Made by a program: the position numbers and the translations under genes
The notes under the pieces: model-generated
Told to the model about the DNA's origin: nothing
Seen by the model: the letters and a program-made list of their open reading frames with translations, nothing else
The model's database searches: none
Shown: piece by piece, positions 895 through 62,000 of the stretch
Layout of the letters: each line of letters starts with the position of its first letter
Position numbering within the stretch: position 1 is the stretch's first letter
Source: Heteronotia binoei
Taxonomy: Eukaryota
Direction: 5' to 3'
Assembly (NCBI RefSeq): GCF_032191835.1
Contig: NC_083243.1
Span: 175,522,001-175,586,000, forward strand
DNA length: 64,000 nt

Positions 895-1092
895 TCAGTC
901 GTCCTCCTCCCGCAGCTGTTGATGCCTGCTCTGATACCACAACATGGTGGGCAAATTTTGACAGCCTTGATAGCGACGCTGACGCTCCTCCTCACCCAGA
1001 GGCGGTACAGAATGGCAAGGTGCTCCCGCTAATGTGACGTTGAGCAGCTGGGCTGAGGTGCCAGAGGCCAAGACTGCCGACCAAGGGCCCAC
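895..1092 (-). CDS. Unnamed clan CD-like gene, exon 7 (terminal)
   Basis: ctcttttacttcag| acceptor, VGPWSAV...GAPCHSVPPL...YQGCQNLPTMLWY...EEDD*, 198 nt. Confidence 0.85.
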   Translation of the reverse strand: MGPWSAVLASGTSAQLLNVTLAGAPCHSVPPLGEEERQRRYQGCQNLPTMLWYQSRHQQLREEDD

Positions 1093-4000
1093 CTGAAGTA
1101 AAAGAGAGAAAGTTTCACCAGGCAAAAGATCACTATTGGGATTTTCACAAACATTAAAATAGAAGTTAGAGAGAGAACATTATCTCAGTAATCTTAAATT
1201 AGGTAAGACTGAAGGGGCGTTAAAGCTACCGCACGTTCTTAAATTTTGAATTGGGTCCAGCAATGCGTGAGAAGAAAGGAAAATGTACTTGGTGCAGTTC
1301 CACTTGTGCAAGCAGTAGTACAACAGCTACAGGAACATATAGTGCTTTAATATAATTGTTAATGAAAGAACAATGTTATGGAGCAAAGGGCTGTACAACA
1401 GTCTTCACATTATTTCGTTTAATTTGGTTTTAAAACTTTTCAGTACCTTGCGCTATGCCTTGTTCATTCGGAAGACAGTGGGGATACAATCATTTTAACT
1501 TAATACAAGTAGACATTGAGGAATAATTTTAGCAGTCTGCCTGAACAGTGTCTATTATGCATGTAGATCAAACACTACGAGTGAGCACATGGGATCAAAC
1601 ACTATAAGTGAATTGCCCTTATTATTGCCCTTATTTGATGACCTTAAATTTGAATATCACTTAAGTGACTTCAAATTATACAATTTTTTTCTCTAGTGGC
1701 AGAAGTCTAGTTTTGGACAAGAAAATTATCTAGAAGGATATACTAGCAATGGAACGCAACTTCCCTAGTGAAGGAGCCACAATTCCCATTTTTAAAAAAT
1801 ATACTTTGCTAAAGCAACTTTTCCACATGTGTTTACATTCTTGTTTTCTTTGTCATTCCATGTCAAATAGCTGAATAATAGATCTGAGTACACTACCAAT
1901 GTCAGCTCTGTGGCCATTCATCAAGTCCAATGCCTACTATGGATGGCCAGCTTCAGTATGCCACATTATTCTATATTGCTGCTCAACTGAGGGAGAGTTC
2001 TCCATGCGTTTTTCTGTTGGCCAAAACGAACCTGGCTGCAAGGTGGAGCAACTGGAGGATGGTTGGATTTACGGGGAATTGAAACGTGCACTGAACTTGC
2101 TGCATAATTGGCCAAACATTTCTTTCCTTGAGTCACTGATACATTCCAAGTGCCTCTTTTCCCTGCTCCCCTCTCTCCAATTTGTTTCATCCTGTTTTGT
2201 CTCCCAGAACTGGGAGAAACCAGCATCCCTTTAAAGCCCTATATGGCTTGGGACCTGTCTACCTGAAGGACCGTCTCTCCCCGCATGTTCCCCAGAGAGT
2301 ACTGAGGTCGGGATCACAAAACTTCCTTACTGTCCCTGGGCCGAAAGAAGCCCGCTTGAAAGCCACAAGAGAAAGGGCCTTCTCTGTTGTGGCCCCTACA
2401 TGGTGGAATCAGCTACCGGAAGAGGTGAGGGCCCTGCAGGACCTTGTTCAGTTCCGCAGGGCCTGTAAAACAACCCTCTTCCGGTTAGCCTACACCTAGC
2501 TTGAGAATTTTAATGCAACCTGCCAGATCTCTGTATATATTGGAATATTTATTAATTTTTATGGTTTTATCTGTTTTAAAGTTATTCCCTTACATGTTTA
2601 AATATTGTTTAATTTATGTTGGATCTAATGCTGGAAGCCGCCCTGAGCCACTTGTGGGAAGGGCGGGATATAAATTCTAAATAAAATAAATAAATAAATG
2701 GTGATGCCTCATTCACTAAAATCTGCCTCTTTGCACTCACCTGTTGCTAGTACTCACCTGCCTACCAAGGTAATGCTAGTACTTTAAAAGAGGTTTCACT
2801 ATTTGGCTTTTTGCTTGCAGCTAGTATGGGGATAACTTGCTCTATAACCTCCTTGTCTACAAAGCTGTGGCTCTCGTAACCTCTGTTCTGCAGCTCTGCA
2901 CATTGTGGTACTTACTGGCAAGATATGCTGGAGAAGACACTGGTCAGGCTGCAGCCCTGCCCAGAACTCAGCAAAAGCTGATCCACCACTGGTGGCAATG
3001 CCACGCACAAGCACCACATTGGGATGATGCCGTGATGCCCGCAGCTTCTTTGCCAATGGTTCTGGATAGCTCTGGTCAAGAAAGAGGAGGACCCTGCGTG
3101 CACTGCAGCTTTCCAAATCAGCTAGGAGCTCAGAGATGGGATACCGCTCCTTAGGATCAGCCTGTGGGGAGAGGAGGACAGCTCATTAGCATCTGCCCCT
3201 TTGTGACAGCTCCCCCCCTTCACTACTGTACAGTTCAGAGATCAAGAGAATTCCACTGCCCAAGAGTTAAAAGGAATGGATTAAGCAGGAAATGGCAAGC
3301 CAGGGCCAGAAGCCACTGCAACACGGGGGGGTTGTTTTCTCCCTGCAGGCACACATGAAAGAAGTGGACGGGCCTTTGAAGGGAGCAGATGAGAGGGCTG
3401 AAGTCCCCACCTGCAGTTCTGTCAGCATCTCTGCTTCCACCAGTTGAGCTGGCCAGGACATGCTAGGACAGGTGGTGAGATCCCCTCCACATCCCTTCCT
3501 GTGCACGAGTGGCTCAGTTCAGTTTCTACTACCAGCCAATCAAAGCCTGAACACTTTCAGATGGCCAAATACAGGGGTCTTTTGGATTCAGCAAGGGCTC
3601 CTCACAGACTTAAATAGAGAGAGGTGAGTTGAACTTGGCTTGGTGATTAACAGCCAATAAGAATGGATTTCTGTCTACTAATGTGAACTGAGATGTTTTA
3701 TCATGAGAACAGAGGTTCAGAGGCTGGTGCCAGTGGAGTTAGGCCTTTATGCCCTTGGGAGAGCCAATTCTGGAAGGTTAATTTGATCTCCCTGGATAAC
3801 TTCCCTGTTTCCAGTCCCAATCTGCCCCTCAGACCTGACTCACAATGCCATTATGGTTGGCATCCCACAGCAGTATGGTGCCATCGCTGGCTGCTGGGCT
3901 GTTGAGGTAGAGCACCAGTGAGTCGGCACAGTGCAGGCTCCGGCAGACCAAGGCTAGGTGCGAGCGAATTGCCAGCTTCTCTGTGGCTGGGTGCACATCA

Positions 4001-7000
4001 CCCATCTCCATGGCTGCTGCCCAGGAAAGAAGAGGGAAGAGGCTGCTGACTTCAAATCCCATCGGTCTGTCTCTACACTTCTCTAGCAATCCCATCCTCT
4101 ACGCTATACCATCCTCCCAAGAACACACCGAGACACTCCACTCTATTATCTTGTAAACCTCTTATCATGTCACCCCGCAGTCGACGTTTTTCTTTAGCTT
4201 GGAGAAACGTCGACTGCGGGGTGACATGATAGAGGTTTACAAGATAATGCATGGGATGGAGAAGAGTAGAGAAAGAGGTACTTTTCTCCCTTTCTCACAA
4301 TACAAGAACTCGTGGGCATTCGATGAAATTGCTCAGCAGACAGGTTAAAACGGATAAAAGGAAGTACTTCTTCACCCAAAGGGTGATTAACATGTGGAAT
4401 TCACTGCCACAGGAGCTGGTGGCGGCCACAAGCATGGCCACCTTCAAGAGGGGTTTAGATAAAAATATGGAGCAGAGGTCCATCAGTGGCTATTAGCCAG
4501 TGTGTGTGTGTGTATATATAAAAAATTTTTGCCACTGTGTGACACAGAGTGTTGGACTGGATGGGCCATTGGCCTGATCCAACATGGCTTCTCTTATGTT
4601 CTTATGGGAAGGGACTAATTTGGGACAAGGTGGGAATTTTGCTAGGCTCTTAGTGGTCTACCCTGTAACAGCCCCATAGGGCTTTTCTTTTTCTGTCCAT
4701 TACCTATAGGCTGATTATAATTAGGGATAAAATCAAAGGCATGCAACATTAAAGGCTGCATGAGAGCTGGCATGGTGTAATGGTGAGAGTGTCGGACTAG
4801 GATCCAGGAGAACTGAGTTCATAACACCAAACTGCCACGGACGCTCCCTTGGTGACCTTGGGCCAGTCGTGTACACTCAGCCTAACCTACTGCTCAGGGT
4901 TCTTATGAGGATAAAAAGGAATGGGTCCCCACTGGGGAGAAAAGTAGGCATAAATAAAGTAAACAAATAAATGCTTATGCTTTCGCAGATGGGGGCAACG
5001 TGGTAGGATGTGACTCTGGAATGGAAGACTGTTTTCAGAAGGTTGGCAAGAACAGAGCGAATAGTTGTTGAGACCCAAATGATCACAGGCTCTGAAGAGT
5101 TGCCCTTGGAAAAGACACCCTTTTAAGAAACCAGGAGGCTTCAAACCCTGGTAGCAGGACTGCTCTCTTCCATGGATACCTGATGTCTGCCCCTCACTTG
5201 CAAAGAAGGCCTTGATGTGCTCTTGGCGGAAGCCGTTCCTTCGAAGCATCTGGTAGAAGAGCAACAGGTTGTGAGCATGATGTGGGTAGGTGACCTGCTC
5301 CTGCCAACCACCTAGGAGGGAAACACTGTCAAGCGCTCAGAAAATGGGAGGGGAGGAGACAGCAGTTTCTGCCAAAGCTCAACAAGGAAGGTATAGCCAA
5401 GCACCACTAACCCTGTGTGCTAGGAGAAAGAGCCACCCCTTTTAAACTCCTGCCTCGTGAAACAAAGCAGCTGACATTTGGACTGAGATCAGATTCTCCC
5501 TAATCCAAAACATTTGGTGAGGTCCCTGCAGAAAAGGCTTGGATCCCTTTCCCCACCTAGGAGTGTGTCCCTCCTAGCAGCCCCAAGTGCTATTCTGAAA
5601 GTCACACCTGTTATCAGCACGGCATGATCGCATGTCTGATACAAGCGGCACGACTTATACATTGGAAGCTGCTGCCGATGGCACCGCCGGGTATTCTTGT
5701 TGAGCTCGCAATAGGCGACTGTGGAACTGGAGCTGATGAGGGGCAGAGGCTGAGGGCATGGGCTGAATCCACGGAGGTCTGTGCAAGGAAAGATGTGAAA
5801 GAAGGCATCAGGGACATTGGGGGTCAAGGAATAGCTTTGTGAGTGGGAGTACAGCAAGTCAATAACAAGACTGTGAGATAGGGTTGCCAAGTCCAATTTA
5901 AGAAATATCTGGGGACTTTGGGGGTGGGGCCAGGAGACATTAGGGGTGGAGCCAAGATCAAGGCTGTGACAAGCATAATTGAACTCGAAAGGGAGTTCTG
6001 GCCATCACATTTAAAGGGACGGCACACCTTTTCAATGCCTTCCTTCCACAGGAAATAATGAAGGATACGGGCACCTTCTTTTGGGGCTCATAGAATTTGC
6101 CCCCCTGGTCCAATTTTTCTGAAACTTGGGGGGTATTTTGGGGAGAGGCACTAGATTCTATACTGAAAATTTGGTGCCTCTACCTCAAAAAACAGCCCCC
6201 CCCAGAGCCCCAGATACCCGCGGATCAATTCTCTATTATTTTCTATGGGAATAAATCTCCCTAGGGAATAAAAGAGTTCCCAGCAGACATTTCCCTCCTC
6301 TCCCCCCGCTTTCTGATGACCCTGAAGCGGGGGGAGGGCCTCCAAACCAGGGTATCCCCTGCCCCCACCTGGGGATTGGCAGCCCTACTGTGAGAACAGC
6401 ACCATCTCCCCAACACCTATGCCCAGCTTATCCTGTGATCCTCCCTGAATGTAATGTTTCTGTCGCCTGCACTGATAGCCTTCTACCATGATATTCGCAG
6501 AACCTGAAAGCAAATATCTAGTTGGCTGCTGCCACTTCCTTCCTTGCAGCCACATTTTGGTGGCACCTCAGAAAAGAGCTGCTGTGGCTTATGTTAGCAG
6601 AAACGACCGTTTAAGGTGACGTCCGAAAGCAGCATGAATGCACCCACCCATGCAGTGTAGCTTTTGTGGATGTTTAGGGTCCTGTGCCACAACCACCAAA
6701 GGCAGGAAATGGATCTCACAGAGCCCAACAGGTGGATCCTCACGACGAACACGATCTGCTGACCGCTGGCTCCGTCCTTTGCTCCGTCCTGGCCTGCGCT
6801 TCAGCTGGTTCTCACAGCGACTCCTCTGGGCAGGCGTCAAGCACTCATAACTCCCTGCAGGAATAAAAACAAACCTCTGGAATAAAACAGAGAACCTCCA
6901 CAGGTAGTTTGCCACAAAAGAGCACACACAGCCAGGACAGGTGAAATATGCCAGAGCTATACCAATTCCCAGTGCTACTTTTTCAACAGCAAAAAGAACA

Positions 7001-10000
7001 TTTCACTTGCAATGTCACCGTTCCCTTTACCAAACATTATATGACCACATACGAGAACAAGGTTTCATCCTGCCCCCATTGTCCTTTGGCCCTCTTTAGG
7101 CAAAAAAAAATGTAACGCAAATAAATTCAGACATTCAAAATGTTTTAACTGAAATAGAACAAAATCAGCAATAAGAATCCTCAGCACGGAGATAGTACTG
7201 CAGCATACTATTATTACATTATCAGCTGTGCAAAACGACAGACCCAAACACTTCCTACTCTTGCCCTCCGAGTAAAAGGAAAGATAAACAGGTTATACAA
7301 TCACATTTTCTGAAACTATATACAATTGTTCATCATAAAGGACAAAGAACTGTGTCAAGGAATGAGCCAGGATAGCTGAAAGTGTCCTATGCAGTGACCC
7401 ATTACCAAATCAGGGCTGGACACGGACAGAAATCACTTGTCTTTATCCTTTTTTGATTGCTTGGCAGCTAACTCCAAGTCTAGATCCTTTAAACTCTCCC
7501 TTGCATGTTGGCAGTATCTTTGTACTTTGGTGACAGCCAGTGTGGTGTACTAGTTACAGTACTGGACTTCGATTTGGGAGACACCCATCTGAATTCCCAC
7601 TTTGCCAGGGAAGCTTTTTGGGTGACCCTGGAGTACCTGTGGTGACCTTTTGGGTACCTGTGGAGGTTCTCAACCTAACCTAGCTCACAGGGTTACTGTG
7701 AGGATACAGTGAAAGACAGGAGAATGATATAAGTCCCATTGGAACCCCACTGGGGAGAGAAGTGTGATATAAATGGAAGTAAATAAAAGAAACAAATAAC
7801 ATGTCTTTCAATAGGCCAAAAAATATAATTAAACGGAACATTAAATTACTGGTAACTAACTAGTGGTTTGTTTGTCATAACTAGCATTGATTCAATAAAT
7901 CAGTTAGGCTAATTAAGATTACGAAGCTACCAGTTAACTGTGCAGCAGATTTTTTAAAATTAATGTTTAAACTATCATATTTTAATATAAAAATTCAACA
8001 TACATTTTGGGTGGCAGGTGCCATCTGATAGGAGGCTTTCTGTCTTCTCTCACAACTGAATGGACCCTTGGACTAAGATAGTGTAACATATATATATGAA
8101 CTACATTTCTTCAGAAATATTTTTATTTACGTATATACACATTGCAATCCTATGCAGTTACTCCAATCTAAGTGCATTGGCTTAAGATGGAGTAACTCTA
8201 TATAAGATTGCACTATTCATATAAGTAGTCAATGATTAAAGCTGAAATTATTACGGTATTTCACTATACTTTCATTAACTCAGTGACAACCCAGCAACAG
8301 AGAAGGCAACTGGGCAAAAAGTAACCAGTGGTTCACTCAAAAGACAAGTGCTAAGGGTTAAGCAATCTAGAAGTCATGCTTTGCAGCCAGAAAACATTAT
8401 CCCCCAAACACGGAGTGTACGGTGTTGGTACGCTTACCTGGCACAGAAGGAAATGCATCCTACCCATACTCACCAAACTAGGATTAATAACTCTCATTTC
8501 AAACAGGTTCTGGGGCTGGAACCAGGCTTCATATAAACCCTCAAATTACAATGCCGGCCTGTCAGTGATTGTCATGCTGAGCACTAAAGATCTCAGCGAG
8601 AAACTCTGCCTTGTGGTAGCTTCCATTACTGTTTCCATGTCAATCTCTCCTTGCAGCACTATATCTTCCCCCAGTTCCTTCCCAGTGGTGGCCTCCTATT
8701 CTGCCTTCCTCATCCTCTCGAGCATTCAGTTATCATAATGTTAGAATACAGAGCCCAACTAAGCACAGCGGAGTGTTCCCATCAGGGTCAGGACCAGTAG
8801 GAGCCTTGACCTGTCTCCTGCAAAGCAGCTCTACTTTCACCTCCATCTTCATAGTCTGAGCAACCTCTGCAAAAACTAGGAGAGGGTTGTCACAAGCATG
8901 AGGCTATTAATTAGGGATAGTGCCCTCTCTCCCTACAGAGCTTCTTGATGGAAGGAGATACTGTGGGAGCCTGAACAGCCTCTGCTATATTTGCCATTGC
9001 TGGGGAAAGGGTTTGTTTGAAGGGCAGAGGGGAGGAATACTAGAGAAAGTTAGGTTAGCTTCTTTGACTGTTCTTGGGGAAGCATATTTCATGGACACAT
9101 AGGATCAGAATGAATCTCGGAGGCAACCAGTCAATCCAGCCTTTCCAAGACAAAGTCAGCATATCAACCCCATCCTGCAGATCCAATGATCCAGACCAGA
9201 AGGTGGCACAAATCAGAGAACAAGGAAGTGCTCCTCCAAGGCACCCGTGAAGCAGATTGCTTCAGATCTCAAAAATAACATGTGACAAATGAAGAAGAAG
9301 AAGAAGATATTGGATTTATATCCCGCCCTCCACTCCAAAGAGTCTCAGAGCGGCTCACAATCTCCTTTACCTTCCTCCCCCACAACAGACACCCTGTGAG
9401 GTGGGTGGGGCTAAGAGAGCTCTTACAGGAGCTGCCCTTTCAAGGACAACCTCTGCCAGAGCTATGGCTGACCCAAGGCCATTCCAGCAGGTGCAAGTGG
9501 AGGAGTGGGGAATCAAACCCGGTTCTCCCAGATAAGAGTCCGCACACTTAACCACTACACCAAACTGGCAGCCCTAAGCAATGAAACACTTCCTAGCCAG
9601 TCTTGTCTTGGGCAAAAATCCCTTTGCAAACCTCAAATATGGTCATAAGTGAACTGTAGTTGCAAGCAGATTCAGGTGGGTAGCCATGATGGTCTGAAGC
9701 AGCAGAACAAAGTGTGAGCCCAGTGGCACCTTTAAGACCAACAAAGTTTAATTCAAGGTATGTACTTTCATGTGCAAGCACACTTCTTCAGATACAGTGA
9801 AACAGAATTCCCCCAACCATTACATATAGTCAGAGTCAAGATGCGTATGCACTAGGTGATTATAGCTGAGCTTGGATTAAGGTGGCTGTGATGACGGTAA
9901 ATTAGCAAACAAATACAAGAGTTAGTTATTTTAGTGCAAAGGAACTTCAGAAACAGATTTGAATGGGGGACTGGTATTACAGCACTCAGAACAACAGAAC

Positions 10001-11736
10001 CCCCAGGGCTTAACAGAGATACTGGCTTCATATCTCAATACACATGCTAAATCACTCAGTTCTCACTTATACCCAGAAATCAAATGTTGTTAGTCTTCAA
10101 GGTGCCACATGACTAAAACTCAGTTCTCACATCTGTTGTTAACTCCTTTATTATCTGTATGCCAATTTGCTGCCATTTACGTGATTTACCTGATGTGTTA
10201 TTCCAATCTTAGCTGTATTTATTACTCAGCTATCATTCACAGATCCTACCAGCTACCTTAATCTAATCTCAACTATAATCACCCAATACTTATACATCTT
10301 GACTCTAACTGGCCCTTCTTGACAAGCACACCCCCCCATACGTAATGGTCGAGGAAATTCTGTTTCACGGTATCAGAGGAAGTGTATTTGCGCACAAAAG
10401 CTCATACCTTGAATAAAACTTTGTTAGTCTTAAAAGCTGCCACGGGGCTGAAACTCTGTACTCAAAAGATACTGGGCTCTTGGGTCCACTCCAACCAACT
10501 CCCATCAGAAACAAATAGCTTTCAGCCCAAAGCATTTCATACCCAGAAAAGGTTGCAAACACTTTGAAGAGGGGATCTGGTCAAGAATATCAGGAGAGAA
10601 ACCAGGGTTAAAGCTGACTGGTGAACAAACCGCCAGTCATTTTGTGCAGAAAGGATGCTTTGCCAGCAGAAGACCAAAGGGTATAGTAATAGGAACATTA
10701 GATGTGGGAAAGAGAATGCCTCAAGGCTTAATCTTTAAATATTAGAAGTGCTGCTGGGCCTTAGACAGGAATTGACCTCATAATTTACCATTTTAAAACA
10801 ATTATTTTGAGCCCCAAGGCCATGCCTTCAGATAATGAGTACCTGCAATGAAGTGGCCAATTCCTTTAATTGGGGGGGGGGGGGGAGTCCAGTCCCTTTC
10901 AACTGAGGCTTCATGGGGAGCTGCTTGCCAAGGGGTGTTATTTACCCCCATGCCACGAAAAGCTTATATTGGCCATTCCCGCACATTAAGCCTCTCTTAA
11001 AGGGCCGTTTTCTCCAGGGCTACTGGCAACTCTACTCAGAGGTGAAGGACACGGGACAACTACTCTGCATATGCCCCAATCCGCTGGGCTTGAGTGACAG
11101 CAGAGAGCTCCGAAGGGCATGAAGAGGGACCAGACTGCAGCGGGAACATGCCAAGTGAATTTGTTCGGCGGCGGAGAAAGAGGGGGCGCTTGGTCTGGAG
11201 TAAGCGCGCGCGTGTAAATGCTCCCGGGCCAGTACTTTGCACTCACCCAGGTAGAAGCGGTCACGGCTCCGGCATCGGCGTGGGCTCACGTTGAAGTCAA
11301 TATAGAAGAGGAGGAGCGGATGGCCGAAGCTGGCGCCGGGGCTGGGGTCCAGCACTAGGACTGCATCGTGCGCCGGAAGAGCGGCGCCGGCAGGGCGCTG
11401 GGAAGCCGCGCTCTGGTTGAGGCTGGGCACCACCAGCGCTCCGCCGGGCCTGTCTCCCCAGCCGTCGGGCAAGAGGGCTCGCACCTTGTGGCCCGGCTGC
11501 GTGGGCTCCGAGACGTAGACGGCGGGCCCCGGCCCTTGCGAGAGCCGCGCCAGCCGCTGGCACTGCGGCAGCGGCAAGAGCCCGCCGCGCTCCGGACACG
11601 GCGCCACCGCCACGTGCCGCAACGCCGCAGCTGCCCAGCGGGCCACGCGGGCTTCGGAGAAGCGGCTCCCCGACGGGGCGGCCGCGCAGGACCAAGCCAG
11701 GGAGGCAGCCGCCAGCGCCAACAGCAGTGGGGCCAT
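895..11736 (-). CDS. Uncharacterized secreted protein with a legumain (C13)/caspase-like clan CD domain, probable pseudo-peptidase; 7 exons, 538 aa
   Basis: Exons 11736-11247, 6854-6648, 5778-5608, 5311-5180, 4016-3844, 3161-2916 and 1092-895 all have GT-AG junctions, matching phases (1,1,1,1,0,0), and sum to 1617 nt = 539 codons ending in TGA. N-terminal signal peptide MAPLLLALAAASLAWSCAA. HAVLITGGW...HAHNLLLFYQMLRRNGFRQEHI resembles the legumain first strand/helix. CpG island at the 5' end; AATAAA on the minus strand at 363-368. Confidence 0.9.
2228..2698 (+). mobile_element. L2-type LINE 3' fragment
   Basis: FKALYGLGPVYLKDRL...RAFSVVAPTWWNQLP...RACKTTLF is a typical L2 ORF2 C-terminus; tail gccgccctgagcc...gggcgggatataaat(taaa)n. 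Confidence 0.85.
2916..3161 (-). CDS. Unnamed clan CD-like gene, exon 6
   Basis: tccccacag| acceptor, ADPKERYPISELLADLESCSARRVLLFLDQSY...QHILP, donor |gtaagt, 246 nt. Confidence 0.88.
3844..4016 (-). CDS. Unnamed clan CD-like gene, exon 5
   Basis: NAGNAG acceptor ggcagcag (alternative start 4013), ...DSLVLYLNSPAASDGTILLWDANHNGI, donor |gtgagt. Confidence 0.88.
4192..4606 (+). mobile_element. CR1 LINE 3' fragment
   Basis: RTRGHSMKL...RKYFFTQRVINMWNSLP ORF2 end; CR1-type tail cttctcttatgttcttatg. Confidence 0.9.
4762..4972 (+). mobile_element. tRNA-derived SINE (Squam3/Ther1-like), diverged
   Basis: A/B-box-like head, ggtgaccttgggccagtc...cagcctaacctac core, A-rich tail. Confidence 0.75.
5180..5311 (-). 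CDS. Unnamed clan CD-like gene, exon 4
   Basis: ttccctcctag| acceptor, GGWQEQVTYPHHAHNLLLFYQMLRRNGFRQEHIKAFFASEGQTS, donor |gtatcc, 132 nt. Confidence 0.88.
5608..5778 (-). CDS. Unnamed clan CD-like gene, exon 3
   Basis: tccttgcacag| acceptor, DLRGFSPCP...TCDHAVLIT, donor |gtgtga, 171 nt. Confidence 0.88.
5879..6387. mobile_element. Non-autonomous hAT (Blackjack-like) element, copy 1
   Basis: TIRs tagggttgcca / tggcagcccta; perfect 8-bp TSD CTGTGAGA. Confidence 0.9.
6648..6854 (-). CDS. Unnamed clan CD-like gene, exon 2
   Basis: tttttattcctgcag| acceptor, GSYECLTPAQRSRCENQLKRR...LHCM, donor |gtgggt, 207 nt. Confidence 0.88.
7532..7798 (+). mobile_element. tRNA-derived SINE (Squam3-like), diverged
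   Basis: gccagtgtggtgtactagtt head, caacctaacctagctcacagggtt core, A-rich tail. Confidence 0.7.
8142..8213. mobile_element. Short palindromic MITE
   Basis: tgcaatcctatgcagttactcca...tggagtaactctatataagattgca hairpin. Confidence 0.6.
9291..9569 (-). mobile_element. tRNA-derived SINE (long Squam3-like subfamily)
   Basis: Reverse complement of gccagtttggtgtagtggttaag...; (ctt)n tail; near-identical to copies at 20032, 26849 and 63713. Confidence 0.85.
9665..10460. mobile_element. Probable Penelope-like element fragment with inverted terminal segments
   Basis: 9700-9810 (ggcacctttaagaccaacaaagtt...cacttcttcagatacagtgaaacagaatt) recurs inverted at about 10355-10460. Confidence 0.5.
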
Positions 11737-12480
11737 GGGGCTGCTGGAGCCTGCGCCCCGCCGCAGCTTCGAGCTTTCTGCCTGGCCAGCGGGACTTTAG
11801 TCCCCGCCCTGTCCCGAGAAGAGGAGGCTGCGTGTGCAAGGCGGCGACCGGGAAGGGGGGTGGGTGGGGGGGAGGCTCGCCAGGCTTTGGCGTCCTTCCC
11901 AGCCCCACGTGCCCGTTTTAACGCTCCCGGGGTGCCCCTTCTGAGCGAACACACTCTCTCCTCCCCCACCCGGGCGGCCTATTCTTGCACTGGTCGAGGC
12001 TCGTCTGTTCTCCACGTGGAGAAGACTCTGGGGCAGCCCTTTGCCAAGCGCGGTTGGGGGCCCCGGGGCCACATTCAAAAGGCGCCAGAGATTGGCGGAA
12101 GAAGGAAAGGCAGCGGGGCGCTTCTTTGGACACGTGCTCTAAGCGGCCTTGCGAAACGGGCGATAAACGAACAGCAGCCGCGGCCCTTTTAAAAGCTTTC
12201 CATCTCTTTTGCTCGTTTTTAGACTTCTCTTTGGTTTTCGCATGGTACAGAGCCACTCGTTCCAGTGCAATGCAAAACCCAAAGAAATTTCCAAGTCACT
12301 GACCGAGCCAGGGGGAGATGAAGTGCCGCGGAAGTCGGAAGGTTAAGGGAGGACTTCCCACCTCCCCTTTTTGCCGGGACGTCGCTTGCACACGCTGCAA
12401 GTTTGCGCGTTAGACACTAGGCCGTGGCTGGGATCTTGGGCCAATGGGCGGCCTACCTACCTACCCGACCCATGACCTCA
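11030..12480. promoter_or_regulatory. CpG island / promoter of the unnamed gene
   Basis: Abrupt GC- and CpG-rich stretch over exon 1 and upstream; ETS-like cggaag (about 12328), CCAAT (about 12441). Confidence 0.7.
11247..11736 (-). CDS. Unnamed clan CD-like gene, exon 1 (signal peptide and N-terminal region)
   Basis: ccccATGG start, 490 nt, donor CTGG|gtgagt, phase 1. Confidence 0.88.
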
Positions 12481-12823
12481 AGGATTCTCTTTACGTAGTA
12501 ATTTCCCCCATACCAAATGTTCATCCAAACTACCAATTGTCTCCATGAAATTGCTCCGAAACGAAAAACCTTTCTGCCTCACAGGAACGGCGGGAAGAGC
12601 AGGGGGGGGGGGGGGAGGTTTGTGTCACCTTCTAGGCTGGTGTGCATCGACGGTCACGAATTGGAGGCCTGAGAGTGAGCTTGAACCGTGGTAACGCATA
12701 TTGGAGGGTACAGAGAGAGTTAGCAGTAGCACCTCGACAGCAATCCAGACTTGACTGTCAACCGCACCCTTCGCCCGCCTGCTCTTGTTGCAACCTGTGC
12801 CAACACGTGGGAAGGGGGGTTGC

Positions 12824-37423: not shown

Positions 37424-38811
37424 ATGGCCTCAGCAGGGCCAGAAGCCTATAGCCTAAGCCTTGAGACAGGAAACCGGTTCCATGCGGGCATCCCATCAGG
37501 GCTGACAGTGCCACCACTCACAGTGAAGCTTCACGAAACCAAGACCTGGTACCTCGCAAAGCAGCAGCTGAAACCCATCTGGCAGCTGGAACGGAATCAT
37601 GTGACCCCTCTCCAACACCGCCACCCAGCCCACTCAGGGACCTCTCTCTCGCGTTCCTGCTTCCTGCGTCCAGACTTGCCATGTCGTGAGGCAGTGCTTC
37701 TGAGCCCTCCTCCATCTCAGCCCCATTCTTTCCCAAACTTTCTTGGAAGTGCCCTGCTCTGTCGACGTTCTTACTTCAGACACAAGCCCTATCGGAGGCT
37801 TGAGTCCATCTGTGTGCAGCCAGGTGCTTTGGAGAAGAAAGCTCTTCGCATCCCACCACCTTTCCTTTGTTCCATTCCTAACAACGTCATGTCATCCTCA
37901 ACCATGGATCCATTTCTGGTGCCAAGTACCCCCAGTGGGCGTTCCAGTCCAGTGTCAAAGGGGTTTACCCTCAACTCAGGGAAGCAGAGCTCCAGTTCCT
38001 ATAGACCAGTGCTAAACAATAACTCTTTTCTGAGGCCAACCAGTGCTAAAGTGCCTTTGCAGCAGCACCATCACCAACCACTACCACCAGAAAATAAGAA
38101 GCTAAAAAGCCTGTCAAGACCGCCAGGGTTCTCTTGGACTCATTCTGGGGGGCATGGAGATTGTTCCATGAATCTAGATAGGAAACTTGGGAGAAGTAAC
38201 GGCCTAACTCTAGAACAAACTGGTGCTAGATCTTGCTTACCTATTCACAACAGCCCAGTCCTCAAAGTAGATCGGTCGTCTTGGCGAGCTGAGGATGGTG
38301 AGAATAGATCGCAGAACCTAAAAGAACAAAATGTTCGGTTGACCGAAGCCATGAGGAAGCTGACTGCTAGTGGTATCCGGAAGATTAGTACCTACAATGA
38401 GTTTGGTCACCGCATTGACAGCTCCTGCCTTATGAATGCAAACTTCCACTCCACTTTGTTCAGCCGGTGGAAACCGCACATTGTAGCACAGATCACCCCA
38501 AAAGAAGTATCAGCTGCTGCCCCTCCAAATCTGGAACATGACGGCCGCCGCCAGAGCCTTACTGGTTCAGAGGGTGCTGAAATCTGCACTAAGCGCATCA
38601 ACGTTCGCTGTCTAGCCTCAGATCCTGAGCCTTCCAACCATACCGCCTCAAGCCCAATTGTCAGTTCTCCATCTGTCAGTAGTACAGAGCAAGTGGTTAA
38701 AACGGAGCTGTCCCCGCGGTCTACTGTCTCTGACGAAGAGACAACAATTTCATCTCTACCGTTCGGCACAGATACCAAATGGGGTCAGCCTACTGCTGTG
38801 AAAGATACTGA
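37424..38811 (+). CDS. TTLL4: TTLL4 coding exon 1 (large, low-complexity N-terminus)
   Basis: 463-aa ORF; acceptor at 37350; donor GA|gtaagt. Confidence 0.95.
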
Positions 38812-40049
38812 GTAAGTACTGTGGTAGGTATGCAGGGGCGGTGGTATGTTTTGTTTTCAAGAATCCCTTATGTCCTGGGCTGGCAGTGATGTGGTACAGA
38901 ACCACTGTAGAGCATGGGTTGTTTTTTTGTAGGGGGGTAGCGCAGAAAGGAGTTAGGTTTGTCTCCGATTGGGCATAACCATTTTGCTTTGGAGACTGGT
39001 CTGTTTGGCAGGTGTGCCACAAGTCGAGACCAAAGTATTAAGCAGGATTACCTAAGTCAGGGGTCCCGAACCTCTGAGCCGTGGACCAGTCCTGGTCCAC
39101 GGCCTGTTAGCAGCCGGGCCGCGTAGCCTCGCTGCCCCCCTCCCCGTGGCGCCTTTGCAATTTTAAGGAGCAGCGAAGTGCCTCCCGCGCTGTTTAAAGG
39201 CCGACACCCCCCCCGGTTGATCAGCTGATTGGTGGGGGAAACTGCAGCAGCAGCAGCGAGGACCCACTGAAAAAGTGGCGCTGCCCTTGCCTCCTTCCCA
39301 CTTCCTTCCTGGGCGTGAGAAGGAAGTGGGGAGGAGGCAAGGGCAGCGCCGCTTTTTCAGCGGGTCGCTCGCCACTGCTGCTGCAGTTTTTCCCACTGAT
39401 CAGCTGATTGGCGGGGGGTGTGTGTCAGCCTTTAAAGAGCCTGGGAGGCACTTCACTGCCCCTTCCCGGGCCTTAAAATTGCGAAAACGGAGGGAGAAGG
39501 AGACACCACTGGGGGGGGGGGAGGCCAAATTCGGTGTACCCACCCTGCCGGCCCTGGGGCCACGGTGGGTGGGCTGGTTCCTGGTGCCAGAAAGGTTGGG
39601 GGCCACTGACCTAAGTGGTAGCTTGCATTTCTCCCTTTTTTGAACATATATGAACATATGAAGCTGCCTTATACTGAATCAGACCCTCAGTCCATCAAAG
39701 TCAGTATTGCCTACTCAGACTGGCAGCGGCTCTCCAGGGTCTCAAGCTGAGGATTTTCACGCCTACTTGCCTGGACCCTTTTTAGTTGGAGATCCCGGGG
39801 ATTGAACCTGGGACCTTCTGCTTCCCAAGCAGATGCTCTACCACTGAGCCACCGTCCCTCCCCTGGCCGCCGCCAGAGCCTTACTTTTCTCTTTATTGCA
39901 TCACTTCAATGCAGTTTTATAAATAGGGCACCCTTTTCCTACACTGTCACTATCCGATAAACATACTGCTTTCAAGTCTTTTTAAAAAGCATGTATGAAA
40001 AGCACGGCTCATCATTCATGAGAGCGTATACAATCTTTCTCGCGTGGAA

Positions 40050-40118
<69 letters not shown>

Positions 40119-43100
40119 TAGAAAATCATGTGCGTAAAGCAAGCCACCCTAAGATAGAGGGATGAATTGGAGTACTTGATATGGTATAGTGTTTAGAGTG
40201 TTGAATTTAAATCTGGGAGATACAGGTTTGAGTTCCCACCCATGAAAGCATGCTTGGTGACCTTGGATCAGTATACATTCTCAGGCTAAACTACACCATA
40301 GGATTGTGAGGATAAAATGGAGGAGAGAATAATAATGTAAGCTGTTATGGGTCCCCATTGGCAAGAGAGGTGGGGGGGGGGGTAAATGAAGCAAATAAAC
40401 GGTGCAGTATTTTTAATTACCTCCCCAAAATGATGGTGTGAAGCATACACAGAAGTTGTTCAATGGGATGTCTCAACTGTTGTGCAGTTAACTACCAGTC
40501 CCAGTGCACATAGATTCCTCTTTGTATCCATCATTGTGAAGGGTTTCAGGAATATATAAGATGCCTACAGTGTTCTGTTTTGTGACTCTAAGCTTTGATT
40601 TTGCAGCTCTACGCTTAACTTGCCCCTGCTGGACCAAGCAGAAGTGGAGGATATAGAAGAAGAACTCCCTGATGGCTTGGAAGACGTCTGCAGTCAGGAT
40701 GAGGAGGGAGAAGAAGATGATGACGAAGGCCAGTAGTATTGTGCCCCCATCACTTTTTGTAAAATACTGAAGTACAGCTAAAAAAGAAGAGAGTTGTCAT
40801 GCACTACCGTCAGCAATTAGAATAATAGAATCATGGAGTTGGAAGGGACCTCTAGGGTCATCTAGTCCAACCCCCTGCACAATGCAGGAAACTCAGAAAC
40901 ACTTCCCCCCTAAATTCACAGGATCTTCATTGCTGTCAGATGGCCATCTAGCCTCTGTTTAAAAACCTCCGAGGAAGGAGAGCCCACCACCTCCCGAGGA
41001 AGCCTGTTCCACTGAGGAATCGCTCTAACAGTCAGGAAGTTCTTCCTGATGTTGAGTCGGAAACTCTTTTGATTTAATTTCAACCCATTGGTTCTGGTCC
41101 TACCTTCCGGGGCCATAGAAAATAATTCCGCACCATCCTCTCTATATGACAGCCCTTCAAATACTTGAAGATGGTGATCATATCACCTTTCAGCCATCTC
41201 CTCTCCAGGCTAAACATCCCCAGCTCCTTCAGCCTTTCCTCATAGGACTTGGTCTCCAGACCCCACACCATCTTCGTCACCCTCCTCTGGACTCGGTCAA
41301 GCTTGTCTATATTCTGCTTAAAATGTGGTGCCCAAAACTGAACACAATACTCCAGGTGAGGTCTTACCAGAGCAGAGTGAAGCGATACCATCACATCACG
41401 TGATCTGGACACTATACTTCTGTGTCCAAAATTGCATTTGCCTTTTTAGCCACTGCATCACTCTGTTGACTCATGTTCAGCATATTATCCACTAAGACCT
41501 CTAGATCCTTTTCGCACATACTACTGCTAAGACAAGTCTCCCCCATCCTATAACCATGCATTGGATTTTTCCTACCTAAATGCAGAACTTTACATTTATC
41601 CCTGTTAAAATTCATTTTATTGATTTTAGCCCAGTTTTCCAGCCTGTCAAGGTCATCCTGTATCCTGTTTCTGTCTTCACAACCCCACCCAATTTAGTAT
41701 CATCTGCAGATTTAATAATCATTCCCTCTATTCATCCAAATCATCGATAAAGATGTTGAACAAAATAGGTCCCAGGACAGATCCTTGAGGCACTCTAATT
41801 GTCATTTCTCTCCAAGAGGATGAGGAACCATTCACAAGCACTCTTTGGGTGCGATCTGTCAACCAGTTACAGATCCACCTAACGGTAACAGAATCCAAAC
41901 CACATTTTACCAACTTGTCAACAAGGATAGTATGGGGAACCTTATCAGAAGCCTTACTGGAAAGATAAACAATGTTATCCAGCAAGGTAGTCACTTTCTC
42001 CAAAAAAGAGATCAGGTTAGTCTGACATGACTTGTTCTTGAGAAAACCATGCTGACTCTTAGTAATCACATCCATTCTTTCTAAATGTTCCAGGATCGAC
42101 TGTTTGATGATTTGTTCTAAAACTTTTCCAGGTATAGATGTCAAGCTGACGGGTCGGTAGTTACTCAGATCCTCTTTTTTCCCCTTCTTGAAGATGGGGA
42201 CAACATTTGCCCTCCTCCAATCTTCCGACATCTCTCCTGTTCACCAAGAATTTTCAAAAATAATAGCCAGAGGCTCAGAAATTACATCCGCAAGCTCTTT
42301 TAGAACCCTTGGATGCAATTCATCTGGCCCTGAGGACTTAGTTTCATTTAAAGAAACCAGGTGTTTATGTACTACCCTATGCTGATCTTAGGTTGGAACT
42401 TCATACCCTCCTTATATGTTCTGTTTTTGCCACGTTGACCACCGTTTCCCTCAGAAGAGAAGACTGAGGAAAAGTAGGAATTGAGCAGCTCCGCCCTCTC
42501 TTCATTAGCCATTACAATTTCACTTCCTTGTCCTTGCAATGGGCCCACCAAGTCCTTGGTCTTTTTCTTACTCTGAACATAAGAAAAGAACCCTTTTTTG
42601 TTGTTTTTAGCATCTTTGGCCAGCCTAAGCTCATACTGAGCTTTAATTTTCCCAACTTTTTCTCTACAAGGACTGGTGATTTGTTTAAAGTCATCCTTGG
42701 TTAAAAGGCCCTCCTTCCAATTTCTAAAGGAGTCTTTTTTATTTCTCAAGTCTTTAGAGAGCTGTTTATGGAGCCACTTTGGCTTCTTTAGGCTTTTTCC
42801 ATTTTTTCTTCTCACAGGAATCGTCTGCGATTGCACTTTCAGTATTTTGCTTTTAAGAAACTCCCACCCCTCCTGAACCCCCTTCCTCCTAAGTATTTCT
42901 GGCCCTGGGATTTTACCCAGCATAGTTCTAAGTTTATCAAAGTTTGCCTTTCTGAAGTCCAACCTATAAGTCTGACTACATATAGCTTTTCCCTTCCCTA
43001 AGACAGTAAATTTCAAAATCACGTGGTCACTACTGCCCAGGGTACCCACTATTTCCACTTCTTCAATCAATTCTTCCTTGTTGGTGAGAATCAAATCCAA

Positions 43101-61073: not shown

Positions 61074-62000
61074 GATAGATAGATAGATAAATTTATTGTC
61101 ATTGTTCTCAACAAAAAGAGAGCAACGAAATGAGGTGCTCTTCCACAAAACATACCAACACATCAAACACACATATTCATATTCATACCATTTAAATACA
61201 TCTAAAACCATTTAAACCATTTAAATACATCTAAAACAGATAAACATTCATAAAACCATTAAAACCATTTAAACCATTTAAATATATCTAAAACAGATAA
61301 TCCTTCATAACCCTGCATTTAGCCTAACCACAGCACTTGGATAGAAACTGTCCTTAAATCTGTTTGTCCTAGCCTTCAACACTCTATATCGTCTACCTGA
61401 CGGTAAGATCTCAAATAGCAAATGGCCCAGATGTGAAGGGTCCCTTAGGATCATTTGTATCTTCCTTTTACATCCCATATTATACAGATCCACCAATGAG
61501 GGGAGAGAACATCCACCAATCTTTTGTGCTCTTCTCGTCACTCTTTGGAGCACCCTTCTCTTTGCTTCCGTGCAGCTCCCAAACCACGTGCAGAGGCAAT
61601 AAGATAAAATGCTCTCAATGGAACTACGATAAAAGGCAACCAGCAGACTCCCTGACAGTTGTAGTGATCTTAAGAGTCTTAAGTAGTATAGTCGTTGCTG
61701 GGCCTTTTTCTCTAGAGCTAAAGTATTTGCCCCCCATGTTAGATCCTGTTTCATGGTAATTCCCAGAAACTTCCATTCTGTCACCTGTTCTACCATAACA
61801 CCATCAATAAACAACGGCTGGATGTCCTAACTATTTTTCCTGTAATCCACTATAATTTCCTTCGTCTTATTTATATTAAAAATAAGATTATTTACTTTAC
61901 ACCAAAGGGACAGCTGTTGAACTTCCCTCCTATACGCAGACTCATCTATTCCCAATAGAGTAAGGACAGTCTCCATGTGTACTTGTACACCAGCTATGGT
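61074..62000 (-). mobile_element. Rex1/Babar-type LINE 3' fragment
   Basis: KTKEIIVDYRK and FLGITM...KKAQQRLYYLRLL...FYRSSIESILSYC..W...LPSGRRYR....RTNRFKDSFYP (DUF1891-like C-terminus); tail aataaatt(tatc)n. Confidence 0.85.

What the first reader, a model, noticed from the sequence alone, without database searches (positions are those of the whole stretch)
3069..3903. Both catalytic residues appear replaced: probable pseudo-peptidase
Clan CD proteases use a His-Gly...Cys dyad (legumain FTDHG and IEAC; caspase-like SGHG and DSC/QAC). By eye, the aligned strands here read YLNSP (no His; codons 3895-3903) and FLDQSY (Ser at the Cys position, 3069-3071). Inference: a catalytically dead scaffold, ligand-binding protein or inhibitor, or unusual Ser-based chemistry. 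This would be unusual for a secreted clan CD protein.
Basis: inference. Interest (0 to 1): 0.7.

Follow-up and report, generated by a model that had tools for sequence, protein, structure and literature searches.

The report
Conserved legumain-like protein without catalytic residues
A gecko-like lizard gene encodes a secreted protein shaped like the protease legumain but lacking its catalytic histidine and cysteine, and this "dead" site has been kept almost unchanged from molluscs and insects to reptiles, which points to an unstudied non-protease job.

Summary
On the minus strand, codons 3903-3895 read Asn-Ser-Pro and 3071-3069 read Ser, inside a seven-exon, 538-codon gene (11736..895). Spliced RNA contigs confirm five of its six introns.

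A model of the closest annotated orthologue's C-terminal half (pLDDT 87.8) superposes on human legumain at Z about 17, rmsd 3.0 Å, over about 200 residues. PIGK, metacaspases and caspases score similarly. Peptidase_C13 is hit by 18 of 55 family members.

By strand order and local motifs, YLNSP occupies legumain's FTDHG position and LDQSYPE (family consensus VDQSYSG) occupies IEACESG. This placement was not measured on coordinates.

The family carries no functional name in any source. It spans Bilateria, from molluscs, annelids, arthropods, echinoderms and amphioxus to fishes, turtles and squamates.

- No member has His-Gly.
- Pro is kept in 202 of 204 sequences.
- Ser is kept in 213 of 227.
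- Ser is replaced by Asn in arachnids and Daphnia, which argues against a Ser nucleophile.

Next to the site lies an EF-hand-like D-x-N-x-N-G-x-x-D-x-x-E loop, present in 182 of 191 members. I read the protein as an ancient, selected pseudo-peptidase, probably a ligand-binding and possibly calcium-dependent module. I found no paper on it.

The parts
11247..11736 (-). Exon 1. ATG at 11736. Predicted signal peptide of about 21 residues (11736-11674), then the start of an N-terminal domain of unknown fold.
   Evidence: Collinear with orthologues P0046/P0048 residues 1-162. Donor GT. Not covered by the laid RNA stretch.
6648..6854 (-). Exon 2. Basic linker and Cys-rich region.
   Evidence: RNA contig joint 5778|6648.
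5608..5778 (-). Exon 3. Cys-rich linker and strand 1 of the legumain-like domain (CDHAVLIT).
   Evidence: Missed in my first model and found through orthologue P0003. AG/GT sites. RNA joints 5311|5608 and 5778|6648.
5180..5311 (-). Exon 4. G-W after strand 1, helix 1 and strand 2. The HH at 5282-5277 corresponds to legumain's S1-pocket Arg44-His45.
   Evidence: Profile alignment to the PAL/legumain YRHQAD segment. RNA joints.
3844..4016 (-). Exon 5. Helix, strand 3, the N-S-P loop, and the first half of the EF-hand-like loop.
3895..3903 (-). Asn-Ser-Pro at the position of legumain Thr146-Asp147-His148. Pro replaces the catalytic His.
   Evidence: Conservation 187/190/202 of 204. Follows the end of strand 3 in the model.
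3844..3864 (-). First seven residues (D-A-N-H-N-G-I) of the EF-hand-like 12-residue loop.
   Evidence: Pattern found in 182/191 family members against 30/38200 shuffles.
2916..3161 (-). Exon 6. Last five loop residues (A-D-P-K-E, 3161-3147), helix, strand 4, the D-Q-S-Y loop, helix and strand 5.
   Evidence: RNA joints 3161|3844 and 1092|2916.
3066..3077 (-). Asp-Gln-Ser-Tyr at the position of legumain Glu187-Ala188-Cys189-Glu190. Ser (3071-3069) replaces the catalytic Cys.
   Evidence: Conservation D/E 224/225, Q 216/225, S 213/227. Follows the end of strand 4 in the model.
895..1092 (-). Exon 7. The last part of the legumain-like core, with a conserved N-x-T sequon, the GAPC and GCQNLPT motifs, and the stop codon at 897-895.
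   Evidence: The VIA alignment of the model reaches model residue about 256 against legumain residue 289. RNA contig.

Best explanation
The window carries an intact, transcribed, seven-exon gene on the minus strand (11736..895, 538 codons). It is the orthologue of a protein family that carries no functional name in any source (zebrafish locus tag si:ch211-67e16.11; LOC-numbered 'uncharacterized protein' in geckos, snakes, turtles, sharks and many invertebrates).

The protein has a signal peptide, an N-terminal region of about 270 residues of unknown fold, and a C-terminal half of about 245 residues that folds like the peptidase domain of legumain/PIGK (clan CD, family C13-like).

In this domain the catalytic His-Gly after strand 3 is replaced by Ser-Pro-Ala/Thr, and the catalytic Cys after strand 4 by Ser. 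The third legumain residue, Asn42, is not kept either. These replacements date back at least to the bilaterian ancestor and are under strong purifying selection. The protein is therefore a selected pseudo-peptidase, not a decaying enzyme.

Inferred mechanism: it cannot do Cys/His proteolysis or transpeptidation. It uses the retained loops at the C-terminal ends of strands 1, 3 and 4 (G-G-W, N-S-P, D-Q-S-[YF]-S-G) as a binding surface for a peptide or other ligand in the secretory pathway or outside the cell. An adjacent conserved EF-hand-like loop (D-x-[ND]-x-[ND]-G-x-A-[DES]-x-x-E) may make this calcium-dependent.

Shown here: the gene structure, its transcription, the fold, the absence of the dyad, and the conservation. 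Inferred: secretion, ligand binding, calcium binding.
For: Gene model:
- All splice sites are AG/GT and the frame closes at 1617 nt.
- Spliced contigs of 1941 nt and 1741 nt from two RNA runs of one study carry the joints 1092|2916, 3161|3844, 4016|5180 and 5311|5608. The 5778|6648 joint was called for X1 only; X14's contig pieces are contiguous across it.
- The exons are collinear with gecko orthologues at 93-94% identity.

Fold:
- AlphaFold2 model of P0003:270-544 with a 55-sequence alignment gave pLDDT 87.8 and pTM 0.89.
- Foldseek's top 50 hits are all clan CD, with PIGK at 8e-7 and legumain at 5e-6.
- VIA-align gave Z 17.2, rmsd 3.0 Å over 202 residues against human legumain 26-289. Metacaspase-4 scored Z 17.4 and PIGK 16.6.

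Sequence:
- Peptidase_C13 is the only recurrent Pfam family, hit by 18/55 members with a best E of 4.4e-6. P0030 scores 21.3 bits against a cut-off of 22.8.
- 9 of the 10 best PDB profile hits are C13 enzymes, all at non-significant E-values.

Dyad absent and conserved:
- Searches show this. Ser is replaced by Asn in spiders, ticks and Daphnia, by Thr in two sequences, and by Cys in one sequence that still has NSP.

Secretory route:
- N-terminal hydrophobic signal, many invariant Cys, and a near-invariant N-x-T sequon.

EF-hand-like loop:
- Present in 182/191 members against 30/38200 shuffles.
- The only PDB hit of the sub-profile is EF-hand 3 of GCAP-2, at a non-significant E of 3.
Against: - No residue-level structural superposition could be printed. 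The equivalence Pro377 = His148 and Ser425 = Cys189 is inferred from strand order and motif similarity.
- The structure is a prediction for an 88%-identical orthologue (P0003), not for the window's own protein.
- Ser is kept in 94% of sequences and the preceding acidic residue in 99.6%. That conservation would also fit a catalytic role.
- The exons of the window and the orthologue P0003 give no Peptidase_C13 hit of their own.
- Nothing here shows what is bound, or that calcium is bound. The loop has Ala where EF-hands have Ile/Leu/Val, and it is preceded by a beta-hairpin, not a helix.
- Absence of activity cannot be shown by computation.
Confidence: 0.7

Rival explanations
1. The domain is an active enzyme with a different chemistry. 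Ser425 acts as nucleophile, helped by Asp423 or by the His aligned with legumain His45, making a Ser-type hydrolase or transferase built on a clan CD scaffold.
For: Ser is present in 213/227 sequences and an acidic residue two positions before it in 224/225. His304 is kept in most vertebrates and aligns with the S1-pocket His of legumain. The loops around the old active site are the most conserved part of the domain.
Against: Asn replaces Ser in arachnids and Daphnia, Thr in two sequences and Cys in one, with the rest of the protein conserved. His304 is kept in only 34/91 invertebrate sequences. His287 is Gln in most invertebrates. No conserved His lies in the loops after strands 3 or 4. The His position holds Pro, which cannot act as a base.
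Confidence: 0.12
2. The catalytic pair exists but is displaced. Another conserved His and Cys (for example His440, His356 or Cys366) reach the groove in the real structure, so the protein is still a cysteine peptidase.
For: The domain has several invariant Cys (C285, C361, C366, C413, C472, C505, C523) and a near-invariant His440. I could not inspect model coordinates.
Against: By the model's strand order, C285, C361/C366, C413 and His440 lie just before strands 1, 3, 4 and 5. That is the edge of the sheet opposite the clan CD active site. In a secreted protein, an even set of invariant Cys is most simply read as disulfides. In all known clan CD enzymes the dyad sits after strands 3 and 4 (PMC4357240; PMC9604545).
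Confidence: 0.05
3. The resemblance to legumain is convergent or only a generic alpha/beta sandwich. The family is unrelated to peptidases, so 'replaced catalytic residues' is a meaningless description.
For: The window's exons and P0003 give no significant Pfam or PDB sequence hit. Sequence identity to legumain in the structural alignments is only 13-14%.
Against: Z 17 over about 200 residues, with clan CD filling the whole top of both fold-search lists. Peptidase_C13 is hit by 18/55 members down to E 4.4e-6. Legumain-like local motifs sit in the right order: A-V-L-I-x-G, G-W, R-H-x-x-[DN], Y-[LF] before the His position, and [DE]-x-[SC]-x-S-G.
Confidence: 0.05

Closest known systems
Legumain / asparaginyl endopeptidase (MEROPS C13, Pfam PF01650)
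   Same: Same core fold over the whole peptidase domain (Z about 17, rmsd 3.0 Å, legumain residues 26-289). Both enter the secretory pathway. Shared motifs: the strand 1 motif, G-W, R/H-H at the S1-pocket position, an acidic residue two positions before the nucleophile position, and S-G after it.
   Different: His148, Cys189 and Asn42 are all replaced (Pro, Ser, Tyr/Phe/Gly). There is no C-terminal LSAM prodomain: the protein ends about 15-20 residues after the core. It has an N-terminal extension of about 270 residues that legumain lacks, and an EF-hand-like loop after the hairpin that follows strand 3.
PIGK / GPI8, catalytic subunit of GPI transamidase (C13)
   Same: Best Foldseek match (7wld_K, E 8e-7); VIA Z 16.6. 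Both are luminal/secretory proteins.
   Different: PIGK keeps the His/Cys dyad and has a C-terminal membrane anchor. This family has neither, and there is no sign of partner subunits.
Pseudo-caspases and other protease-fold pseudoenzymes (for example cFLIP in clan CD; haptoglobin, HGF and azurocidin in the S1 family) - from general knowledge, not tested here
   Same: A protease fold is retained, the catalytic residues are lost, and the protein is kept by selection for binding or regulation.
   Different: cFLIP is cytosolic and vertebrate-restricted. This family is secretory and bilaterian-wide, derives from the C13 branch, and has no named partner.
Metacaspases (C14B), calcium-dependent clan CD enzymes
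   Same: Top VIA hit (AtMC4, Z 17.4). Calcium dependence is known in this clan (PMC4357240).
   Different: Metacaspases keep the dyad. Their calcium site is made of scattered Asp residues, not a contiguous 12-residue loop.

Membership tests
Clan CD (caspase/haemoglobinase fold) | Alpha/beta/alpha sandwich with the caspase-type central sheet, superposable on solved members | tested here: met
   Model pLDDT 87.8. Foldseek top 50 hits are all clan CD. VIA Z 15-17.4 against legumain, PIGK, metacaspases and caspases. Tested on orthologue P0003, which is 88% identical to the window's exons.
Clan CD (caspase/haemoglobinase fold) | Catalytic His (usually His-Gly) at the C-terminal end of strand 3 | tested here: not met
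   The window reads Y-L-N-S-P-A. Pro is kept in 202/204 relatives, and none has His-Gly.
Clan CD (caspase/haemoglobinase fold) | Catalytic Cys at the C-terminal end of strand 4 | tested here: not met
   The window reads L-D-Q-S-Y. Counts over 227 relatives: Ser 213, Asn 9, Thr 2, Cys 1.
Peptidase family C13 (Pfam PF01650) | Sequence score above Pfam's gathering threshold (22.8 bits) | tested here: inconclusive
   No hit for the window's exons or for P0003. P0030 scores 21.3 bits and P0026 17.8 bits. 18/55 members hit at E <= 0.1, best 4.4e-6.
Peptidase family C13 (legumain type) | Third catalytic residue Asn42 and S1 pocket Arg44/His45 | tested here: not met
   In the profile alignment to PAL/legumain, the Asn42 position holds Tyr/Phe in vertebrates and Gly/Arg in invertebrates. 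The Arg44/His45 positions hold His-His in the window, Arg-His in most fishes, and are variable in invertebrates.
Peptidase family C13 (legumain type) | C-terminal prodomain (activation peptide plus LSAM), or the C-terminal membrane anchor of PIGK | tested here: not met
   The structural alignment to the legumain core runs to model residue about 256 of 275. The protein ends shortly afterwards.
Pseudoenzyme (pseudo-peptidase) | Homologous to an enzyme family, catalytic residues missing, and kept under purifying selection | tested here: met
   The family is found in molluscs, annelids, nemerteans, a bryozoan, a brachiopod, arthropods, echinoderms, hemichordates, amphioxus, fishes, turtles and squamates.
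Pseudoenzyme (pseudo-peptidase) | Lack of catalytic activity | not testable with these tools
   Needs a biochemical assay.
EF-hand-type calcium-binding loop | 12-residue loop with ligands at positions 1, 3, 5, 9 and 12 and Gly at position 6 | tested here: met
   D-A-N-H-N-G-I-A-D-P-K-E in the window, across the exon 5/6 junction. The pattern is present in 182/191 members against 30/38200 shuffles.
EF-hand-type calcium-binding loop | Helix-loop-helix context, hydrophobic residue (Ile/Leu/Val) at position 8, and a significant profile match | tested here: inconclusive
   Position 8 is Ala. The model shows a beta-hairpin before the loop and a short helix after it. The only PDB hit of the sub-profile is an EF-hand of GCAP-2, at a non-significant E of 3.

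The most novel reading that the evidence does not exclude
This is a third, so far undescribed lineage of the C13 family in animals, beside legumain and PIGK. It would be a secreted, calcium-binding pseudo-legumain that has used its disabled substrate groove as a receptor or chaperone for a specific peptide motif (for example Asn/Asp-containing or C-terminal signals) since the bilaterian ancestor. It appears to have been lost in mammals, birds and amphibians. A bolder version is that it carries out a non-thiol reaction at the conserved Asp-Gln-Ser site.
Probability: 0.3. Interest if true: 0.75.

Novelty: new variant of a known kind. Interest (0 to 1): 0.6.

Why it matters
Animals are usually credited with two C13-type proteins, legumain and the GPI transamidase subunit PIGK. 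This finding points to a third lineage that is conserved across Bilateria, has no Pfam family, and carries no functional name in any source. My searches found no literature on it.

Its active-site residues were swapped long ago and then frozen. That is the signature of a pseudoenzyme with a real function, not of a dying gene.

It is present in zebrafish, so the function is directly testable by knockout and binding screens. Its apparent absence from mammals and birds may explain why it has been overlooked.

The conserved EF-hand-like loop next to the former active site gives a concrete, cheap hypothesis to test: calcium-dependent ligand binding.

Tried and rejected
1. Exon-by-exon Pfam and PDB sequence searches of the window found nothing beyond chance hits (PurR, WD40 proteins). 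The clan CD claim therefore could not be settled from the window alone.

2. My first gene model had six exons and skipped 5778-5608. The orthologue P0003 exposed the missing exon, and RNA contigs confirmed it.

3. I first took P0026, P0042, P0045 and P0030 for fish paralogues. The cluster look-up showed they come from amphioxus, a chiton, a mayfly and a snail.

4. The word search with exon 6 alone found only one exon-sized fragment, as expected from that tool's length window.

5. I tried to obtain a residue-level alignment of the strand 3 to strand 5 region to legumain with a sub-profile (A4). It gave no C13 hit, only a weak EF-hand hit.

6. The search for bacterial or archaeal relatives by back-translated motifs found none. 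This is a weak test.

7. Five literature searches found no paper on the family: the zebrafish locus name, legumain + pseudoprotease, clan CD + pseudoenzyme, legumain-like + catalytically inactive, and peptidase C13 + pseudoenzyme. The tick papers that mention pseudoproteases concern S1-family proteins.

8. The full-length model from a 25-sequence alignment was too poor (pLDDT 62) to say anything about the N-terminal region.
Full report
**What is in the sequence**

Reading the minus strand gives TAC CTC AAC AGC CCA, that is Y-L-N-S-P, with N-S-P at 3903-3895. It also gives CTT GAC CAG AGC TAT, that is L-D-Q-S-Y, with the Ser codon at 3071-3069.

The window has no N and looks like vertebrate DNA with interspersed repeats. 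The two motifs sit in neighbouring exons of a minus-strand gene.

My first model had six exons. The closest annotated orthologue showed that I had skipped one. The corrected model has seven exons:
- 11736-11247
- 6854-6648
- 5778-5608
- 5311-5180
- 4016-3844
- 3161-2916
- 1092-895

Every intron has GT..AG, and the total is 1617 nt, or 538 codons plus stop.

**Transcription and splicing**

An exon 6 query found RNA-seq runs holding it. I laid the contigs of four runs on 895-6854. One 1941-nt contig (run X1) and one 1741-nt contig (run X14, same study) skip the predicted introns. The joints are 1092|2916, 3161|3844, 4016|5180 and 5311|5608, each with CT..AC on the plus strand, which is GT..AG on the minus strand. 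The 5778|6648 joint was called for X1 only; X14's contig pieces are contiguous across it.

So the gene is transcribed and spliced as modelled for exons 2-7. Exon 1 lay outside the stretch I laid. Its support is the ATG, the donor site, and collinearity with orthologues.

**Identity of the gene**

- Exon-wise Pfam and PDB sequence searches gave nothing meaningful.
- The word search with exon 6 found only one exon-sized fragment.
- The exhaustive representative search with exon 6 found 45 proteins. Among them was a 544-residue protein of the lizard Elgaria (P0003).
- Searching with P0003 returned 162 proteins. All are labelled 'uncharacterized protein', many with the zebrafish locus tag si:ch211-67e16.11. 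They come from squamates, turtles, lungfish, sharks and rays, gar, bowfin and many teleosts.

The window's seven exons are collinear with these proteins. Identity is highest to geckos (Paroedura 93.8%, Eublepharis 92.7%) and is 88% to P0003. The window therefore comes from a gecko-like lizard, and the gene is intact.

No mammal, bird, crocodilian or amphibian appears among the 120 hits listed. Such orthologues would be expected to outrank fishes. Because 42 hits were not listed, I treat the loss as apparent, not proven.

Four divergent hits turned out to be invertebrate: amphioxus, a chiton, snails and a mayfly. A profile of these found full-length relatives in the following groups:
- gastropods and bivalves
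- annelids
- nemerteans
- a bryozoan and a brachiopod
- horseshoe crab, spiders and ticks
- crustaceans
- hemipterans and a springtail
- echinoderms
- hemichordates

The family is therefore as old as Bilateria. A motif-based scan of bacterial and archaeal genomes found no relative, but that is a weak test.

**Is it clan CD?**

A first full-length model from 25 sequences was mediocre (pLDDT 62), yet it already drew PIGK, plant peptide ligases and legumain.

A second model covered only the C-terminal half of P0003 (residues 270-544) and used a 55-sequence bilaterian alignment. It is confident: pLDDT 87.8, pTM 0.89.
- Foldseek's first 50 hits are all clan CD: PIGK 8e-7, legumain 5e-6, then caspases and MALT1.
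- VIA-align gives Z 17.2, rmsd 3.0 Å over 202 residues against human legumain residues 26-289. It gives Z 17.4 against Arabidopsis metacaspase-4 and Z 16.6 against PIGK.

At the sequence level:
- Peptidase_C13 is the only Pfam family that recurs, hit by 18 of 55 members with a best E of 4.4e-6. A snail member sits at 21.3 bits against the 22.8-bit cut-off.
- Nine of the ten best PDB hits of the family profile are C13 enzymes, at non-significant E-values. They align over strand 1, helix 1 and strand 2.

I conclude that the domain is a divergent member of the C13 branch of clan CD by fold and remote homology. The alignment to legumain runs to within about 20 residues of the C-terminus, so there is no LSAM-type prodomain and no PIGK-type membrane anchor.

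**Are the catalytic residues replaced?**

In active clan CD enzymes the His and Cys are strictly conserved, and legumain uses Cys189-His148-Asn42 (PMC9604545). In gingipain R these residues sit at the C-terminal ends of strands 3 and 4 (PMC4357240).

In the model, strand 3 ends at ...L-Y-L-N and is followed by S-P. Strand 4 ends at ...L-F-L and is followed by D-Q-S-Y-P-G. Lined up with legumain's I-Y-F-T-D-H-G and F-Y-I-E-A-C-E-S-G, this puts:
- Pro at His148 and Ala/Thr at Gly149
- Ser at Cys189
- Asp at Glu187 and Tyr at Glu190

A one-residue shift in the loop after strand 3 is possible, but there is no His anywhere in that loop.

The profile alignment of helix 1 places the window's H-H (5282-5277) at the R-H of the plant ligase's Y-R-H-Q-A-D segment. 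That R-H corresponds to legumain's Arg44-His45, which form part of the S1 pocket (PMC4357240). The Asn42 position holds Tyr.

'HHAH' is the S1-pocket element, not a replacement catalytic His, and it is poorly kept in invertebrates (His in 34/91). The His of 'LHC' is variable. Its Cys, like the other invariant Cys and His440, lies just before a strand, on the edge of the sheet away from the active site.

I could not inspect coordinates, so this last point is inferred from topology.

**Conservation**

Counts below are over 204-227 domain sequences.

| Position (P0003 numbering) | Residue kept | Count |
|---|---|---|
| 375 | Asn | 187/204 |
| 376 | Ser | 190/204 |
| 377 | Pro | 202/204 |
| 423 | Asp or Glu | 224/225 |
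| 424 | Gln | 216/225 |
| 425 | Ser | 213/227 |
| 426 | Tyr or Phe | 220/227 |

Mean column identity of the domain alignment is 42%. Not one sequence has His-Gly.

The exceptions at the nucleophile position are informative:
- Asn in spiders, ticks and Daphnia
- Thr in two sequences
- Cys in one sequence of unknown origin (P0181), which still has N-S-P

A residue that can be Ser, Asn, Thr or Cys while everything around it is kept behaves like a small polar contact, not like a nucleophile. I therefore rank Ser-based catalysis low (about 0.12) and favour a non-catalytic role.

**A second conserved feature**

Directly after the hairpin that follows the N-S-P loop, the family carries W-D-x-[ND]-x-[ND]-G-x-A-[DES]-x-x-E. 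In the window this is D-A-N-H-N-G-I | A-D-P-K-E, split by the exon 5/6 junction (3864-3844 and 3161-3147).

It has the ligand pattern of a canonical 12-residue EF-hand loop: positions 1, 3, 5, 9 and 12, with Gly at 6. It is found in 182 of 191 members, against 30 of 38200 shuffled sequences. The only PDB hit of a profile of this region is EF-hand 3 of GCAP-2, at a non-significant E of 3.

Position 8 is Ala instead of Ile/Leu/Val, and the model shows a hairpin rather than an entering helix. I therefore call it EF-hand-like and treat calcium binding as a hypothesis. Calcium dependence is common in clan CD (PMC4357240).

**How it most likely works**

Shown:
- an intact, expressed gene
- a legumain/PIGK-like fold
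- loss of the whole catalytic triad
- strong, ancient conservation of the replacement residues and of the loops on the former substrate face

Inferred:
- Entry into the secretory pathway. The evidence is the signal peptide, many invariant Cys, a near-invariant N-x-T sequon, and no membrane segment or retention signal.
- Use of the disabled groove to bind a ligand, possibly controlled by calcium.

The N-terminal 270 residues matched no Pfam family or PDB sequence and remain unexplained.

**Comparison and novelty**

The closest known proteins are legumain and PIGK. The closest known concept is the protease-fold pseudoenzyme.

I file the family as C13-like by fold and remote homology, but not as a peptidase, because the defining dyad was tested and is absent. 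I found no paper on it in five searches, and no Pfam family covers it. I rate it a new variant of a known kind, with interest 0.6.

**Limits**

- The structure is a prediction for an orthologue, not for the window's own protein.
- No residue-level superposition could be printed.
- The phyletic gaps rest on truncated hit lists.
- Function is inferred.

Noticed in passing
window 3844-3864 and 3147-3161 (minus strand): An EF-hand-like 12-residue loop (D-A-N-H-N-G-I|A-D-P-K-E) spans the exon 5/6 junction. It is conserved in 182/191 family members. This suggests a possible calcium site next to the disabled active site.
   Followed up: partly
protein P0181 (source metaclust, organism unknown): This is the one family member with Cys at the nucleophile position (I-A-D-Q-C-F-S-G). 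It still has N-S-P at the His position, so it is not a restored dyad.
   Followed up: partly
window 58262-58615 (+): An exon-like ORF has a significant Tubulin-tyrosine ligase (TTL) family hit (E 1.5e-12). A TTLL-type gene probably lies on the plus strand downstream. The 463-residue Ser-rich ORF at 37424-38815 (+) has no Pfam hit, and I did not test whether it belongs to that gene.
   Followed up: partly
window 41728-43802 (minus strand), also 44000-44383: A LINE-type retrotransposon remnant. ORFs match endonuclease-reverse transcriptase (E 8e-11) and RVT_1 (E 4e-18).
   Followed up: partly
window 61305-61814 (minus strand): An ORF matches the Pfam domain ALKBH8_N (E 2.8e-13). Its origin was not examined.
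   Followed up: no
window 2089-2685, 4079-4675, 5870-6466: Intronic stretches with contig depths of thousands to hundreds of thousands in the RNA runs, and many variant copies. These are high-copy interspersed repeats that are transcribed somewhere in the genome.
   Followed up: no
window about 11740-12500: A G+C- and CpG-rich stretch lies immediately upstream of the start codon. It looks like a CpG-island promoter.
   Followed up: no
protein P0006 (450 residues): A gene model in which a Cys/His-rich, zinc-finger-like N-terminus (not scanned) is fused to pieces of this family, with the middle of the domain missing. It is probably an annotation artefact in that species.
   Followed up: no
hit lists: No mammal, bird, crocodilian or amphibian orthologue appears among the listed hits, although turtles, squamates, lungfish and fishes do. 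One cluster carries a ferret (Mustela) label beside Oreochromis, which looks like contamination.
   Followed up: no
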